In this document: piece by piece, positions 9,535 through 51,896 of the stretch
Numbering within the stretch: the stretch's first letter is position 1
Layout of the letters: each line of letters starts with the position of its first letter
Assembly (NCBI GenBank): GCA_002189035.1
Contig: NEEC01000004.1
Span: 4,340,001 to 4,404,000, forward strand
Reading direction: 5' to 3'
DNA length: 64,000 bases
Source of the DNA: Utricularia gibba
Taxonomy: Eukaryota > Plantae > Magnoliophyta
Program-made: the position numbers and the translations under genes
Notes under the pieces: model-generated
The model's database searches: none
What the model was told of the DNA's origin: nothing
The model's input: only the letters and a program-made list of their open reading frames with translations

Positions 9535-10675
9535 ATCCCAGATCCTGTGAACATATGAACAGAAAAATCATCAAACCAATGAAATGGGTATCCCGGCAGT
9601 AGAACTCCTAGTTTTGTGTTGCATTCACCCGAACAGCTTCAGATGCGGCGGAGCAAACCAGAGATGAAAAAACAGATGAGGGCTCTGAGTTTAATGACAA
9701 GGCGAGTCCTACGGAGTGCGTTTGACAAATCCACGTGACAAGCTACCTTCTTCCCATGCCAAATTTCAGAAGTCAATATTATATTCACCACATCTCTCAC
9801 CCACGTTATCCAGAAGGGGTCAACAAGTGTTATAACGGTTGGACCGGCTCACCCGGCTGTGCCGGAGGCGCGTGGATCGCAGTTGTTTCCGATAAACCAA
9901 ACATTAAACTGCATTCCTAGTCATTAAAGAAACGTTACTAAACATAGACTCAGGCTGAGCTTCCCGGCGGACGGCGGCTCCATTTGTAATAAAAAAACGG
10001 TTGAGGCGATGGAAGACAGCCTCAGCTCAGAGATCGTCGTCACACATGGACGTTGATGGCGACAGCATGTTTCGGCAACGACTAGATCTTGCTTTTGTTC
10101 AGCTCCAGAGACGCGGATCTAAGGTTTGGCTCCCTAACCGCCAATTGCGACGACCGTTCAGGCGGCGGCCGATCGTCAACAAACGGGTCGACCCGTCGGC
10201 CGGCCCGCAGGTTCTTAAACCCTCCCTCGGGTCAACACATAAACCATTATCCAACCAGTGACGGTCAAGCAGCATACAACTGCTTGAACAACAACGAAGC
10301 TCCATATTCCTCGTTGGTATGAACTGAAACTGCTTTCAAACTCTCTAATAAGAATTCAAAGTAAAATGAATTAATATTTTATAATTTTTTAAAAAAATCA
10401 AATGAGGAATGTATTTTATTATAGAATACAAAATTTAATTTATCGCAATATATAAATGATATTTTTTTATATTTTTACATTTATCGTTAAAAAAATTTAA
10501 ATCACTTCTAGTTTTAATAAAATGACAAAATGCACGTATAGTTTAACAATATTTATACACACAATTTCTTATTTTAAAATGAAATTCTATTGGGCTCCTC
10601 CTGAAAGGAATGAGAGTGGAAAAAATATTCTTAAGCAAGTAAGATAATGGTACAAAGAATACAAGAACCTGGGAT

Positions 10676-12124
10676 TTACTTGTTCCACCAGTAAATAAGT
10701 ATCAAGCACAGGCAGAGGGATGCGACTAACCAGAGAAGGAGTGTGTCCATGGACTTCTTCTTCTTTATTGATGACAGAATCTGGTTGATCTACGCACCAT
10801 CAAGCAGAAGGTTACTGCATGCTGGTTGATGTATTTTAGTATTAGCACTGAAGGATCAACCCTTACATGTGGAAGACGGCTGCTGATGTTGCCGACTTTG
10901 GAACTAATCCCACCAAAAGTGGCTCGCTGGAACACGAGGGTGCTCAAGGTCTCTTGTGCTTGTGATATTACAGAGTCCATCTGCAAGAGTTGATGATAAT
11001 GGAGTGAAAACCTAGACATAAGGAAGGAATATGCTAAAGAAAATGGATGAATGTGGGCTTCACGGTATGCTACCAATCAATGCTTCATTCAACGCCCAGC
11101 AATGTAAAATCAGAGTCTACACGGAGTAACTGACAAGCAGTGGAAAGAGATCAACGAAGTATCATATTACCTGGCCAGAACTCCGATGCAGAGATGCCCG
11201 TTCCTTGAGAAGAGATTGTTCGTAGGAGCCACTACCATCTTCAAGGTCTAATCTACTTCTATCAAATTCTCGAAAGTCCTCTAGCAGCAAGGCATGCTCT
11301 TTCTTAGTTCTGTAGCCAGAACGGATCCAATCAAACTCCTACAACACAGTTGAGGCCAAAAAAATATATCTTTTGACTTAGAATTGGCATCGTCCAGTGA
11401 ACGGCTAAAACGTTATCAGAAATGGGCATACTGTGAAAAGCTGTACATAGATGACAAGACCTCTCACATCAACCATACTTCTCATATAGAGCTAGAATGT
11501 GCAGGTCCACCATCACTTACCTGATTAAGATCCCTAAGAATTTCTTGATGTCGAGTGAATGTATGAGAAAAGGTTTCAGAACCTCCCGATGACACCCAAG
11601 CCTGCATTTGCGCATTTACGTGCTGTAGCTGCCTCAAAAGTTGCTCTATTCCAGTCTCCAAATCATGGCCGTTGGAAGGATCAAATTTGGTCGTTGCAAC
11701 TTTACGGTACAAGTGTATTTGCTCATCAAGCTGTGCTTCAAGCTTCCTCGCCTAGCAAACGAACGAATTCCATTTCAATTCTAAAACAACTAGAGACTAC
11801 ATAATCAATAGCATACACATCCGCCGAGAATAAATCCGTTTTCTCAACAAGACGAAACGATGCAAATCACAATTCAAAACAGCAACAAGAACACGCAGAA
11901 ATAGTACAAATCAATGGAATTAATCGTTCCGATAGCGCTAATTCATGCAGAAAAGCTTGAAAAAAAAGGATCAAATTGTTATCAGTGTAACGGAAAATTT
12001 TCAAAAATCACAGTCATTTTCTGATTTGGAGCAAGAATAGTAACGGATCCCGAAAGTTAAGCGACGAAAAAGAGGGATCGAGAACCTGCTTGCGCAAAGT
12101 ATCCCAAGAAGCGGGAGGATCCAT
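10676..12124 (-). CDS. GOS11: Golgi SNAP receptor complex member 1 (Qb-SNARE), 5 exons
   Basis: Exons 12124-12086, 11751-11521, 11338-11171, 10980-10867, 10789-10676. MDPPASWDTLRKQARKLEAQLDEQ, QMQAWVSSGGSE, KKKKSMDT followed by a C-terminal TM helix LLLWLVASLCLCLILIYWWNK*. Confidence 0.95.
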
Positions 12125-12200
12125 AATCGCTCCTTCTCTCACAAAAATTCCTGAATCCAGACAGTGGGAGCCGGGCTATCGAAAACGTGGAAATTCCAAA

Positions 12201-13770
12201 CTCTCATGACAGCCCAGCCCGGCTCCTCATGGCAACCCAGCTCGGATCCTCATGCAGCCCAATCCTTCTCCTCATGGTAGCCCAGCCCGGCTCCACGTAG
12301 CAGCCCAGACCAGATCCGCATGGAAGCCCCGCCCAGATCCTCCTGGTAGCCCAGCCCGGCTCCTCATGCAGCCCAGCCCGGTACCTCTTGGCTGCCCAGC
12401 CCAGCTCCTCTCAGCTGCCCAGCCCGGCACCTCGTGGCAGCTCAGCTGGGATCCTCATGGCAGCCCAACCCGGATCCTCATGCAGCCCTGCCTGGATTCT
12501 CGTGGCAGCCCAGCCCGGATTCTTATACAGACCAGCCCGGATCCTCATGCAGCCCAGCCCGGATCCTCGTGGCAGCCCAACTCAGATTCTCATGGCAACC
12601 CTACCCGGATCCTCATGCAGTCCCGCCCGGCTCCTCATGGAAGCCCTGCTCGGATTGTTATGCAGCCCAGCCCGGATCCTCGTGGCAGCCCAGCTCGGAT
12701 TCTTATACAGACCAGCCCGGATCCTAATTGCAGCAAAACCCGGATCCTCATACAGCCCAGCCCGGATTCTCATGGCAGCCCTACCCGGATTCTTATACAG
12801 ACCAGCCCGGCTCCTCATGGCAGCCCAGCTCGCCGAGCCCCGATTCTCATGGCAGCCCAGCCCGGATTCTTATACAGACCAGCCCGGATCCTTATGGCAG
12901 CCCAGCCCGGATTCTCATGGCAGCCCATCCCGGATTCTTATACAGACCAGCCCGGCTGCTCGTGGCAGCCTGGCCCGGATCCTCATGGAAGCCCAACCCG
13001 GATCCTCATGCAGCCCAGACCGGCTCCTCGTGGCAGCCCAGCTCGGATTCTCATGGCAGCCCAGCCCGGATTCTTATACAGACCAGCTCGGATCCTCATG
13101 GCAGCCGAACCCGGATCCTCATGCAGCCCAGCTCTAAACCACTAAGCCCATCCCGGATTCTCATGGCAGCCCTACCCGGATTCTTATACAGACCAGCCCG
13201 GATCGTCATGGCAGCCCAACTTGGATCCTCATGCAGCCCAGACCGGCTCCTCGTGGCAGCCCAGCCTGGATTCTCATGGCAGCCCAACTCGGATCCTCAT
13301 GCAGCCCCCCCGGCTCCTCATGGTAGCCCAGCCCGTCTCCTCATGACAGCCCATCCCGGATCTTCATGCAGCCCAGCCCGGCTCCTCGTGGAAGCTTAAC
13401 CCGGATCCTCATGGCAGCCCAACCCGGATCCTCATGCAGCCCGCCCGGCTCCTCATGGTTGCCCAGCCCGGCTCCTCATGGCAGCCCAGCTCGGCTCCTC
13501 ATGGCAGCCCAGCTTGGATCCTCATGGTAGCTCATTCCGCTTCTCTTGCAGTCCAGCCCGGCTCCTCATGGTGCCCAGCCCGGCTCCTCGTGGCAGTCCA
13601 GCTCGGCTCCACGTGGCAGCCCTGCCCGGCTCCTCGTGATAGCCCTGCTCGTTTCCTCGTGGCTGCCCATCCCGGCTCCTCGTGGCTGCCCTGCCCGGCT
13701 CCTCGTGGCAGCCCAGCCCGGATCCTCACGCAGCCCAGCCCGTTTCCTCTCCGCAGCCTAGCCCGGATCC
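12201..13770. repeat. GC-rich minisatellite, about 70 units of 22-23 bp, consensus GGATCCTCATG(G)CAGCCCAGCCC
   Basis: Continuous tandem units with no unique spacers; variant unit GGATTCTTATACAGACCAGCCC recurs at 12517, 12697, 12787, 12864, 12932, 13068 and 13178. Confidence 0.95.
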
Positions 13771-13863
13771 ACCTTCACTGATTTGCAGCAGTCAAGTTAT
13801 ATTATTTGGGAAAATGAAATTTAAATTTAATGTGAAACTCTACTTAATAAAAAGCTTTCTTGT

Positions 13864-13951
13864 TGGGCTGGTGGGCCCGCGCATCCGGGCCTTCGAATTT
13901 ATAACTTGGCCCACTTTTGCCAACTTACAGAACAAGAAAGCCGTAGGGTTT
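13864..13951. promoter_or_regulatory. Site II motifs plus telo-box upstream of TIM17
   Basis: TGGGCT 13864, TGGGCC 13872, GGCCCA 13908, TAGGGTTT (reverse complement AAACCCTA) 13944. This combination is established for plant nuclear genes encoding mitochondrial and translation components. Confidence 0.7.
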
Positions 13952-14325
13952 TTGTTTTCTGTTTAACACATCGAACAAGGAAGGGGGAAGAATTGTGGCG
14001 GAGAAGGGTCTGAAGCAGGGGAAGTCATTCGATTTCGCTGGGTTGTGAGTATGAATCATTTTCTCGATGTATCTGGGGATAGGTGTGGTATTTGATCTGA
14101 AAGTGTGCTTGAGTGAACCCTGTATGAATTGTCTGTATCGGTGGTTCTTTAATGAAATCTCTGGTATTTTTTGATTTTCGGGGTTTTTATCAGAAATTGT
14201 TACACTGTATTTGATTATGTAGCATTGACCATGAGCTTGAGGACCGCTAACATCTTTATGTTGTTGTGTGCTTCGCAGCTATCGGGTTTGTCAGTAATTT
14301 AGGGATTTTCTGTTAGTATTGTTCT

Positions 14326-14993
14326 ATGGGTACCCCTGAAACATCTCGGGAGCCTTGCCCGGATCGAATCCTTGATGATATCGGGGGAGCCTTTGGAATG
14401 GGTGCAGTTGGTGGTGGTGCTTATCACTTCTTGAGGGGCGCCTACAATTCCCCTAAAGGCGAGCGTGCTCTTGGAGGTTTTCAAGCCATTCGAATGAACG
14501 CTCCCCGTGTAGGTGGTGGTTTTGCCGTCTGGGGTGGACTGTTTTCTACCTTTGACTGCACAATGGTCTATGTTCGCCAGAAAGAGGATCCATGGAACTC
14601 CATCATTGCCGGTGCAGCTACTGGAGGTTTTCTTCAAATGCGGCAGGGATTAGCTTCTGCTTCTCGATCCGCATTGGTTGGCGGTGTGTTACTTGCTCTG
14701 ATCGAGGGAGCTGGCATCATGCTCAACAAAGTTTTCGCTCAGCAACCCGACATTCCCATGGAGGATAATAATTCTTTGCCAAATGCAGCCAATCCAGCTG
14801 CATATGGAATCACAGAGTTCCCAGGCCAAGCTCCAGCAAATGCTGAAACCATTAAAGCCTCCCCCAGCCATCCCCATCTTGGCTCGGAAGCCTTTTCAGT
14901 GGTGCAAGGGAGAAAAGTGACGATGATGGAAGCAAAACCAAGGTCTTGGAGAGCTATGATTCTCCAGCTCCACCATCCTTCGAGTACAAATGA
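14326..14993 (+). CDS. TIM17: Mitochondrial inner membrane translocase TIM17 (TIM17-2 type with C-terminal extension); apparent 1-nt deletion at 14861-14865
   Basis: MGTPETSREPCPDRILDDIGGAFGMGAVGG...RQKEDPWNSIIAGAATGG. The family-type tail SWLGSLF...SKTKVLESYDSPAPPSFEYK* (TGA 14991-14993) is in another frame and is restored by one extra C in the C5 run. Confidence 0.93.
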
Positions 14994-15561
14994 AGTGCAG
15001 CCTCTGCCAGCTTGCTTCCTCAATGAACAGAAGCTAGAATTTTGATCAGCCACGTTGGCATTGGAATCAGTAGAGAAGCTGTGTGTCTCAGTTCAAAGTT
15101 TCAGGCCCCTTCATGATGTTTATTTGAGATTGAACTCGTGGCAGTGATATGCCGAGCCTGCCATTTATTTAGATTACTTCTGATGCTTGTAATAACAGAA
15201 ACACAGGATGCGATACATCTCTAGCTTCTTATTGGGATTCAGTTGTCTATTGGTCAAGTTTCCTCTTTTTATTTTACCTTTCCGGGTTACAATCAAAACT
15301 TTGTGATACCCTTTCCATGTTTGCGCCATCGTCCAAAAATAATAATATGAATACTAAATTAAAAAAACACTAAAGATTGAATTTTGTAAATAAAAACATT
15401 AAAATTGTAACTAAATGTGATAACATTTAACATTATGAAAGGTGGAGAACTTTTGGTATTTGTCCCTTGATGAGGAAGCTTAAACCTGGATCTGCATAGG
15501 CAAAGCAGATGGTATGAAAATGGAAATCAGGAAGCAACTTATTGGAGGTCTGGAACTGACC

Positions 15562-16974
15562 TTAAAGGGCCATCTCCCTCTGCAGTTCAGCAAGCTCGTC
15601 CTCATCCTCATCTACACGTTCTTTCTTCGGTGGTGGTCGAACAGGAGCAGTAGGAACTCTAGGTGCAGGTTGCAGAAGCTGTTCCTCCAGTTCGGCCCCT
15701 TCCAGCTCTTCTAATTCTGCCTCCAATTCATCCTGTTGGAATATATATATATGATATCATGTCCTGTGGAAGCACAAGGATGAAGAAGAAGATAGGAAAC
15801 AATAAACAGCCTACCTCGTCAAAATCAGCTGCGGCACCTAATGGTGCCGCCAGTGCTTCAGTAATTTGTTTCATGTTTTCGGTCTGCTCATTGATCTCAT
15901 CCATTGTCTTGTCGACATCATCGATATTGCTACAAAAGGGGTTATAGGTGAAGAATAAGAAGGGCTTAATCTATGTCTGCAGTAGATAGCTGACAACAAA
16001 TCCAGTTTATTGACTTGGCAAAGGCTAAACTACTGCTAACCATTTGACATTATGCAAATACAACTGGAGTTCATAAGAAAAACTTACGTTGCCTTCTGCA
16101 TAGCTTTCATTGTAGATGCTGCAGTTCTCAAAGCGTCCACAGTTTCTGTGGTAGCTTTTGCCCCCTCCAACATAATCATCTATTAAACAAAATTAAGCAC
16201 GAGTTAAGTGAAAATCCTGCTGAAAAGTACAGAAGATAATACTGCAGGGAAAAAGAAATGAACGGATGCTAAAAACTTAAGGGAGCACCTGATCATGAAT
16301 GCGTAGCTGGAAGTTTCCCAGGTGTTCAATTTGTTGCTCGTAGAGCTTTTTCCTCTTCAAACATCTTATTGCAGCTAGATACAAATACATGACTCATTAT
16401 TAATACAGCAAGTGAATCAGAAGCTCGGTGACAACTCAAGATTCCACACCATAAATTTGCAGCCAATGAGTGTTAAAAGAATTAATTCCTGAATTCTAGA
16501 AGCAACTACCAACAGATGGACAGAGTTAGTAATTCCTAAACAGAGAGCTTGCTCTGGGTTAATAGCCTCTTCCATAAGAACATGGTTCCAGAATTCATCA
16601 TACCAGTTTTATTTTTAGCTCTAGTGAACTCCTTGGCCCTTTCAACTTCGTCAGCAACCTTTTTCATAAGAACTTTCTCTTTTTTCTCTAGCATCTCAAG
16701 AGTCTACGAACCATTCAAAAACTAGAATTTCAGCATTTACACGAAATAGCAATGATAACACTGTGAAAAAAGTCCCATGACTGATCTTTTGGCATGAAAT
16801 AAATGAAACCATAAACATGGAATACCAAAATCAAGCACTTGCATACTATCCTCGGATTAAAAGAAGCAAAAAAAAAAAAAAAGTACCAATCAAGAAGCAG
16901 ACCTCGTTTAATTTGTCGAGCGTTGCGAGAGCATTTGTCTCCTGCTTCGGCTTTCCAAACAACCTGTTCAACAT
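15562..16974 (-). CDS. VPS32: ESCRT-III subunit VPS32/SNF7, 6 exons
   Basis: Exons 16974-16903, 16703-16604, 16374-16289, 16179-16088, 15929-15815, 15732-15562. MLNRLFGKPKQETNALATLDKLNETLEMLEKKE, GNFQLRIHDQMIMLEGAKATTETVDALR, FDEDELEAELEELEGAELEEQLL, ends ELQREMAL*. Confidence 0.96.
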
Positions 16975-51454: not shown

Positions 51455-51837
51455 TTTCACGCGAACGCAAATGCTGCAATTCAAGAAAAGTAACTACAAT
51501 CATACACTGCATACACAGATCATTCAGCGAGAAAAGAAGAGAAACCCAGATCGGGAATCCGAAAATTGGACGGACAAAAAAAGAAGAGATCCGAGGAAGA
51601 GAAGCATTCATTACCCAGAGAAATGTGGGAAAATATCTGAACACCCGCCACCGCAAAGGTTTTTTGGAGAAGCGGAAACAGGGACTAAAAACAGGCATCA
51701 TTCATTGGAAGGAGATAGCGAGGCGAGCCCTCGTGATTGCATGTTGGAGAGGTCCCACGACGAATGTCCGTCAGGCAAACCCTGTCTGGTCGTCTCACGG
51801 GACACCATGGCCACCATCTCCATTCTCTCTTCCTCTA

Positions 51838-51896
51838 GGCCCAATCATGGCCCACTACACATTTATAGCGGCCCAACCTAACTTCTTGATGGCCCA
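51838..51896 (-). promoter_or_regulatory. Cluster of four site II motifs upstream of FAH
   Basis: GGCCCA at 51838, 51849, 51870 and 51891. Confidence 0.6.

What the first reader, a model, noticed from the sequence alone, without database searches (positions are those of the whole stretch)
12201..13770. Minisatellite that is an amplified site II (TCP-type) motif array inside a divergent promoter
The array starts about 80 bp upstream of the GOS11 ATG and ends about 95 bp before the TIM17 site II/telo-box cassette, so it appears to split what would otherwise be a short bidirectional promoter. Its unit contains AGCCCA (reverse complement TGGGCT, the site II consensus TGGGCY); I count about 35 intact copies by hand. 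Site II elements bind TCP factors in housekeeping and mitochondrial gene promoters (established). Inference: a promoter motif was amplified into a VNTR that may act as a homotypic enhancer, an insulator or a methylation-tuned rheostat for both genes.
Basis: partly seen in the sequence, partly recalled or inferred. Interest (0 to 1): 0.75.

Follow-up and report, generated by a model that had tools for sequence, protein, structure and literature searches.

The report
Decayed GC-rich minisatellite between divergent genes
A real 1.57-kb run of 69 worn 23-base repeats fills the gap between two back-to-back plant housekeeping genes; each unit carries a six-base look-alike of a common promoter motif, but nothing shows that it was copied from the neighbouring promoter or that it regulates anything, and similar arrays were noted elsewhere in this genome.

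Summary
Window 12203-13770 is a 69-unit minisatellite of 22/23-bp units, 73-76% matches and 64% GC. It has 36 AGCCCA hexamers, all on the + strand. It begins 78 bp from the ATG of a GOS1-type SNARE gene and ends 93 bp before the TIM17 site II/telo-box cassette.

- No unit carries the longer TCP consensus; the real TIM17 cassette does.
- AGCCCA is the junction of a doubled pentamer (AGCCC)2, and 3.8% of random 23-mers of this composition hold such a hexamer.
- The hexamer is only slightly better kept than the rest of the unit (rank 2 of 23 windows).
- Similarity of the unit to the flanking promoter is not significant (p 0.06-0.16).
- The array is old: the best long blocks are 83% alike, and only a central 45-bp dimer subfamily reaches 93%.

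The scan found this before on other DNA of the same genome. Its notes list 23-bp and 67-bp arrays of 1-1.8 kb with TGGGCT/TGGGCY cores upstream of VHA-H and MIR168 and between PEX10 and sHSP. I could not check those notes.

Function is untested. The one point in its favour is that the array forms nearly all of the GOS1-type gene's upstream region.

The parts
12203..13770 (+). Minisatellite of 69 units of 22/23 bp. The + strand is C-rich (100 CCC runs against 1 GGG run) and carries 36 AGCCCA, which read TGGGCT on the - strand.
12499..13204 (+). Central and youngest part of the array: seven copies of a 45-bp dimer subfamily marked by the TTATACAGACCAG variant, with 93% mean pairwise identity.
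12125..12202 (-). The 78 bp between the array and the ATG of the GOS1-type gene. This is the only non-repeat upstream sequence of that gene, so it probably holds the core promoter and a short 5'UTR (inferred).
12167..12177 (+). An 11-mer, GGAGCCGGGCT, that is the exact reverse complement of a common unit segment. It overlaps a 7/8 match to the class I TCP box on the - strand. Its significance is marginal.
12086..12124 (-). Coding part of exon 1 of the GOS1-type (GOS11-like) Golgi Qb-SNARE gene: 13 codons followed by a GT donor.
   Evidence: later exons
13771..13863 (.). AT-rich spacer between the array and the TIM17 cassette.
13864..13951 (+). Ordinary TIM17 promoter cassette: TGGGCT at 13864, GTGGGCCC at 13871, GGCCCA at 13908 and the telo-box TAGGGTTT at 13944. 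It is bracketed by a perfect 11-bp inverted repeat (13854-13864 and 13931-13941).
14326..15045 (+). TIM17 open reading frame. The Tim17 domain covers residues 15-122. Homology in this frame ends near residue 170, and the conserved C-terminus lies in another frame at 14856-14993.

Best explanation
This is an old, worn, strand-polarised, GC-rich minisatellite that grew inside the short spacer between two divergently transcribed housekeeping genes. It most likely grew by replication slippage and unequal exchange in blocks of 1, 2, 3 and 5 units, then decayed by point mutation to about 75% identity. A younger central subfamily shows later local re-amplification. The site II look-alike AGCCCA is the junction of a doubled pentamer (AGCCC)2 in the unit core, and there is no demonstrated copy of the neighbouring promoter element in the unit. 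TIM17 keeps its own normal site II/telo-box cassette outside the array. The GOS1-type gene must start transcription in the 78 bp next to the array or at the array's edge. The array is probably one of several similar promoter-side arrays in this genome. Shown here: the anatomy, polarity, age structure, absence of the longer TCP consensus and lack of CpG decay. Inferred: the growth mechanism, near-neutrality and family membership.
For: The array and its periods of 23/45/68/113 come, and the unit table. No long block exceeds 83% identity, while the central 45-bp dimer subfamily is 93% alike. The extended TCP consensus is absent from the array and present in the TIM17 cassette. The hexamer is only marginally better kept than other parts of the unit. 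A site II hexamer is expected in 3.8% of random units of this composition. Flank-to-unit similarity is not significant. There is no further copy of the unit in the window: the best outside match scores 17.7 bits over about 2.9 million tests, which is chance level. There is no Rfam match and no Pfam match for the longest array ORF. Tandem repeats are densest in the 5'UTR and the first 200 nt upstream in land plants generally (PMC3887541). The scan's notes describe similar arrays elsewhere in this genome; these are leads only.
Against: The CAGCCCA core is the best-kept stretch of the unit: 35-36 intact units against 15-29 for other hexamer windows. The array supplies almost all upstream sequence of a housekeeping gene, with TGGGCT hexamers starting 87 bp from its ATG, which is where working site II elements usually lie (PMC3884152). 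The unit's CpG is well kept, as in unmethylated promoter DNA. If the genome is a small one, as an unchecked scan note says, a neutral 1.6-kb insert would be expected to be lost. Family membership rests on unchecked notes.
Confidence: 0.6

Rival explanations
1. The array is a working homotypic cluster of site II elements. TCP-type factors bind the TGGGCT hexamers, and the array, at least its proximal units, serves as the promoter or enhancer of the GOS1-type gene, or as a boundary between the two genes.
For: There are 36 hexamers, all in one orientation. The core is the best-kept part of the unit. The array is nearly the whole upstream region of the GOS1-type gene. There is no CpG decay, as in open promoter DNA. 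Site II elements cluster near the start sites of mitochondrial and other housekeeping genes (PMC3884152). TCP class I motifs are enriched at rice TAD borders, and Marchantia TCP1 sits at TAD borders (PMC8470105).
Against: No unit has the longer TCP consensus. The true promoter clusters looked at in this window (TIM17 cassette and the 51.8-kb cluster) are mostly the TGGGCC/GGCCCA form in AT-rich context. The conservation edge is weak (rank 2 of 23). Only 52% of units keep the hexamer. Loss of Marchantia TCP1 did not change genome architecture (PMC8470105).
Confidence: 0.2
2. The array arrived by insertion, either on a transposable element or as a re-integrated satellite circle that favours promoters. 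On this reading it did not grow in place.
For: Several similar arrays are noted at unrelated promoters of the same genome, and some other minisatellites there sit inside MITE or Mutator-like elements. An inverted 11-mer of the unit lies 25 bp outside the left edge.
Against: The flanks show no terminal inverted repeats or target-site duplication: left against right flank gives p about 0.8 in both orientations. The 11-mer is only marginally unexpected. No transposase or other TE feature is nearby.
Confidence: 0.1
3. The two genes still share one bidirectional core at 13860-13950, and the array lies in a 5'UTR intron of the GOS1-type gene. The possible donor is AAG|GTGGAT at about 13779 and the possible acceptor is TTCAG|G at about 12151 on the - strand.
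For: Candidate splice signals sit at both edges. If the array were transcribed and left unspliced, it would add 42 upstream ATGs, so splicing it out would make sense.
Against: The intron would be 64% GC, whereas the neighbouring intron of the same gene is 37% GC. Dicot introns need U-richness (established knowledge). No transcript data are available.
Confidence: 0.07
4. The array is an assembly artefact, either falsely expanded or chimeric.
For: The nearby TIM17 reading frame shows an apparent 1-nt frame change, so base-level errors may exist in this assembly.
Against: The units are about 25% diverged and carry many private variants, so reads tile the array unambiguously. Collapse or false expansion affects near-identical repeats.
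Confidence: 0.03

Closest known systems
GC-rich minisatellites (VNTR loci) of eukaryotic genomes, and tandem repeats enriched in plant 5'UTRs and the first 200 nt upstream of genes (PMC3887541)
   Same: Unit length is in the 10-60 bp class. The array shows strong strand asymmetry, higher-order periods and a G-rich core (GGGCTGG on the - strand). It sits next to a gene start.
   Different: It is much more decayed than the classic hypervariable loci. Length variation between individuals was not tested. Its link to recombination is unknown.
Site II elements (TGGGCY) of plant housekeeping, ribosomal and mitochondrial gene promoters, postulated TCP targets (PMC3884152)
   Same: The hexamer TGGGCT is present in 36 of 69 units, close to the start of a housekeeping gene and in one orientation.
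   Different: Known promoters hold two to four copies near the start site, often with a telo-box, as in the TIM17 cassette here. The array units lack the longer TCP consensus and any telo-box, and the hexamer arises from a doubled pentamer.
Arrays noted by this scan in the same genome (s1-249044 upstream of VHA-H; s1-195073 PEX10-sHSP; s1-261667 upstream of MIR168; s1-277585; s1-195091)
   Same: The reported features match: a 23-bp period or 67-bp higher-order period (here 23 and 68), a 1-1.8 kb size, a TGGGCTGGGC-type core (here GGGCTGGGC on the - strand), strand polarity, and a position upstream of genes or between divergent genes. One note describes an ABRE-like element next to site II; here the unit has C(A/T)CGTGGCAGCCCA.
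   Different: I could not read those sequences, so family identity is inferred from descriptions only.
Promoter tandem repeats that attract RNA-directed DNA methylation (Arabidopsis FWA and SDC; from my own knowledge, not checked here)
   Same: Direct repeats sit immediately upstream of a gene and could in principle tune expression through methylation.
   Different: The unit's CpG shows no excess decay, which argues against long-standing CG methylation. No small-RNA or methylation data are available.

Membership tests
Minisatellite / VNTR | Head-to-tail repeats of a 10-100 bp unit, far beyond chance | tested here: met
   69 units with period 23; 27 near-consensus matches against 0 in shuffles.
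Minisatellite / VNTR | Copy number varies between individuals | not testable with these tools
   Only one assembly is available. High unit divergence suggests slow turnover, except perhaps in the central subfamily.
Site II / TCP-bound promoter element cluster | TGGGCY hexamer present | tested here: met
   36 AGCCCA on the + strand, which read TGGGCT on the - strand.
Site II / TCP-bound promoter element cluster | Fit to the longer TCP binding consensus (class I GGNCCCAC, class II GTGGNCCC; consensus from my own knowledge) | tested here: not met
   0 matches in the array on either strand. GTGGGCCC is present in the TIM17 cassette at 13871.
Site II / TCP-bound promoter element cluster | Motif kept by selection relative to neighbouring positions | tested here: inconclusive
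   Mean conservation of the hexamer window is 0.903, rank 2 of 23 windows. Variants are shared by descent, so the counts are not independent.
Site II / TCP-bound promoter element cluster | TCP binding and an effect on transcription | not testable with these tools
   This needs DAP-seq, EMSA or reporter assays.
Amplified copy of the local promoter motif | The unit is significantly similar to the flanking promoter sequence | tested here: inconclusive
   TIM17 cassette against the inverted unit gives p=0.058, and the left flank gives p=0.16. Shared 11-mers occur at about 17 loci in 62 kb.
Dispersed satellite or TE-borne array | Other copies with the same unit at unrelated loci | tested here: inconclusive
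   There are none in this window. Scan notes describe several in the same genome but could not be checked. Scans of public collections were uninformative.
Dispersed satellite or TE-borne array | Terminal inverted repeats or target-site duplication at the edges | tested here: not met
   Flank comparisons give p about 0.8, and only weak inverted matches were found.
Coding repeat | Period a multiple of three, with protein family support | tested here: not met
   The period is 22/23, and the 297-aa ORF has no Pfam match.

The most novel reading that the evidence does not exclude
This genome carries a family of strand-polarised 23-bp minisatellites with a TGGGCT core that settle in gene-upstream regions, often between divergent genes. 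These arrays would be functional: many weak TCP sites acting as promoter platforms or boundary elements, kept unmethylated. Alternatively they would be footprints of promoter-located meiotic recombination hotspots. This locus would then be one case where the array has become the whole upstream region of a housekeeping gene.
Probability: 0.12. Interest if true: 0.7.

Novelty: new member of a known kind. Interest (0 to 1): 0.3.

Why it matters
As a single locus this is an ordinary promoter-side minisatellite, and its match to a regulatory motif is weak evidence of function. It matters in two limited ways. First, it is a natural test of how much upstream sequence a housekeeping gene needs, because the GOS1-type gene has only 78 bp of non-repeat DNA before its ATG. 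Second, if the similar arrays noted elsewhere in this genome are truly one family, the question becomes a genome-wide one: why do G/C-skewed 23-bp arrays with a site II-like core gather at promoters? That question can be tested with one profile search plus existing kinds of assay.

Tried and rejected
- **Coding repeat:** rejected. The period is 22/23 and the longest ORF has no Pfam match.
- **Known RNA family:** no Rfam match at E up to 0.1 in 10000-16000.
- **TE insertion:** I found no TIR, no TSD and no TE ORF.
- **Other copies in the window:** none above chance in a PSSM scan over all 23 phases and both strands.
The 120 loci read were short arrays, mostly 12/24-bp periods on high-GC contigs, which I take for unrelated (mostly bacterial) repeats.
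- **Viral and prokaryote genome scans** with a unit-specific 21-mer: 0 hits and 1 chance hit.
- **Exact look-up of the TIM17 protein:** not in the collection.
- **Literature searches** for a site II minisatellite or a dispersed 23-bp plant minisatellite found nothing specific.
- **Look-alike search in the scan's notes by sequence:** blank.
- **Joined gene model:** the GOS1-type gene was searched exon by exon by reference.

Full report
**1. Observation**

Tandem Repeats Finder reports one array at 12203-13770 with period 23 (69.0 copies, 73% matches, 4% indels). It also reports periods 45, 68 and 113. No comparable array exists elsewhere in the 64-kb window.

My own segmentation gives 69 units: 42 of 23 bp, 21 of 22 bp and 6 irregular. 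The consensus unit is CTCATGGCAGCCCAGCCCGGATC. It matches 27 times at 3 mismatches or fewer, all on the + strand and inside the array, against none in 100 shuffles.

The array is 64% GC against 41% for the window. It is strongly polarised: GC skew is about -0.26 throughout, with 100 CCC runs against a single GGG run on the + strand.

AGCCCA occurs 36 times, always on the + strand. Shuffled arrays give a mean of 0.7.

**2. Surroundings**

- **Left gene.** On the - strand an ATG at 12124-12122 opens 13 codons and then a GT donor. Later minus-strand exons match V-SNARE_C at 5.5e-9 and sit nearest to GOSR1_N clusters in the Atlas at 0.92. The gene is therefore a GOS1-type Golgi SNARE. Calling it GOS11 and not GOS12 rests on my memory of the Arabidopsis protein. 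The exons were searched separately by reference; the joined protein was not built.
- **Right gene.** The ORF at 14326-15045 is TIM17 (Pfam Tim17, 1.4e-31). It is 79% identical to a Camellia TIM17-2 over residues 1-170.
- **TIM17 promoter.** At 13864-13951 lies an ordinary cassette: TGGGCT, GTGGGCCC, GGCCCA and the telo-box TAGGGTTT. A likely 5'UTR exon and an AT-rich 5'UTR intron follow (inferred).
- **Distances.** The array begins 78 bp from the SNARE ATG and ends 93 bp before the cassette.

**3. Is the motif a TCP-type site?**

Only the six-base core is present. The longer class I and class II TCP consensus sequences (GGNCCCAC, GTGGNCCC; from my own knowledge of the family) occur nowhere in the array on either strand. 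The real cassette has GTGGGCCC at 13871.

An ordinary site II cluster elsewhere in the window (four GGCCCA at 51838-51896) uses the GGCCCA form in AT-rich context. The array uses only the TGGGCT form.

The unit core is a doubled pentamer, (AGCCC)2, and AGCCCA is simply its junction (seen directly in the consensus). Random 23-mers of the array's composition contain a site II hexamer on one strand or the other 3.8% of the time. A chance match is therefore uncommon but not remarkable among the many minisatellites of a genome.

**4. Is the motif under selection?**

I aligned all 69 units to the consensus. The AGCCCA window has a mean conservation of 0.903 and is intact in 35 units. The neighbouring CAGCCC window has 0.906. 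Other hexamer windows range from 0.80 to 0.87, with 15-29 intact units.

The core is thus the best-kept part, but it ranks only 2 of 23. The variable positions (4, 6, 15, 17, 21, 23) are subfamily markers shared by descent and are not independent hits. I score this as weak and inconclusive.

**5. Was it amplified from the local promoter?**

The TIM17 cassette and a segment at 12167-12177 resemble the unit only in inverted orientation. Against shuffled controls, the cassette gives p=0.058 and the left flank p=0.16.

Exact 11-mers shared with the array occur at about 17 loci in the other 62 kb. One falling within 40-100 bp of the edge therefore has p of roughly 0.02-0.05. This is a hint at best.

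The flanks show no target-site duplication or terminal inverted repeat (p about 0.8).

**6. Age and dynamics**

No long block inside the array is more than 83% identical to another. Overall unit identity is about 75%. A central subfamily is younger: seven copies of a 45-bp dimer carrying the TTATACAGACCAG variant, between 12499 and 13204, are 93% alike. The picture is an old array with later local re-amplification, not a freshly homogenised VNTR.

The unit's CpG (in CCCGG) is kept in 90-93% of units. Its transition fraction is 5.8%, lower than at other C (9.2%) and G (8.4%) positions. This argues against long-term heavy CG methylation, and so against the 'methylation rheostat' reading. It fits open promoter DNA.

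**7. What the array means for the two genes**

TIM17 has its own complete cassette outside the array. The SNARE gene has only 78 bp of non-repeat sequence before its ATG.

On its strand every unit holds an ATG, 42 in all. The last of these opens a 22-codon upstream ORF. The start site therefore most likely lies within 12130-12205, unless the array is spliced out as a 5'UTR intron.

Candidate splice signals do exist at both edges. However, the resulting intron would be 64% GC, against 37% for the gene's neighbouring intron.

In either case the array forms nearly the whole upstream region of a housekeeping gene, with TGGGCT hexamers starting 87 bp from the ATG. That is the range where site II elements usually act (PMC3884152). 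This is the best argument for some function, and it is why I leave 0.2 on the regulatory reading.

TCP class I motifs are enriched at rice TAD borders, and Marchantia TCP1 sits at TAD borders, so the boundary idea has a precedent. Loss of that factor changed nothing, however (PMC8470105).

**8. The same thing elsewhere in this genome**

The scan's notes, which are unchecked AI notes, list the following:
- a followed-up 1.8-kb array of about 78 decayed 23-bp units with a TGGGCTGGGCC core upstream of VHA-H (s1-249044);
- a 1.8-kb polarised TGGGCY array filling the PEX10-sHSP divergent promoter, 93 kb before this window (s1-195073);
- a 67-bp higher-order array with ABRE plus site II motifs upstream of MIR168 (s1-261667);
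- a 1-kb site II array between divergent genes (s1-277585);
- a G-skewed 23-bp minisatellite (s1-195091).

These descriptions match this array in four respects. The period is the same (23, with a 68-bp higher order). The core is the same (GGGCTGGGC on the - strand). One note's ABRE-like neighbour corresponds to C(A/T)CGTGGCAGCCCA here. The size and placement also agree.

I could not read those sequences, and a look-up by sequence was blank. I rate at roughly 70-80% the chance that this is one member of a dispersed family.

**9. What I could not do**

- The one metagenome scan used too general a probe and returned short 12/24-bp repeats, mostly on high-GC contigs, unrelated to this unit.
- The unit-specific scans of viral and prokaryote collections found nothing relevant.
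- Literature searches found no description of a site II minisatellite or of such a dispersed family.
- General background is that plant tandem repeats are densest in 5'UTRs and the first 200 nt upstream (PMC3887541).

**10. Verdict**

The feature is a new member of a known kind, a promoter-side GC-rich minisatellite, of modest interest by itself. The genome-wide pattern, if confirmed by one profile search, would be the more interesting object.

Noticed in passing
window 14836-14993: The TIM17 reading frame changes. Homology in the ATG frame ends near residue 170. The conserved C-terminus (WLGSLF...KVLESYDSPAPPSFEYK, then a stop) is encoded in another frame at 14856-14993 (E=4e-14 against a Camellia TIM17). 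This points to a 1-nt indel near the C-runs at about 14857-14880, either a sequencing error or a real frameshift.
   Followed up: partly
window 13854-13864 and 13931-13941: A perfect 11-bp inverted repeat (GCTTTCTTGTT / AACAAGAAAGC) brackets the 66-bp site II part of the TIM17 promoter cassette. About 0.07 such pairs are expected in a 3-kb region.
   Followed up: no
window 51751-51896: An ordinary site II promoter cluster: GGTCCCAC at 51751 and four GGCCCA at 51838, 51849, 51870 and 51891 in AT-rich context. It is a useful contrast with the array, which has only the TGGGCT form.
   Followed up: partly
window 12167-12177: GGAGCCGGGCT is the exact reverse complement of a common segment of the array unit. 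It lies 25 bp outside the left edge and overlaps a 7/8 match to the class I TCP box on the SNARE gene's strand. Its significance is marginal.
   Followed up: yes
window 14344-14378: The best match to the array unit outside the array lies in the first codons of TIM17 (17.7 bits). That is chance level for about 2.9 million tests.
   Followed up: yes
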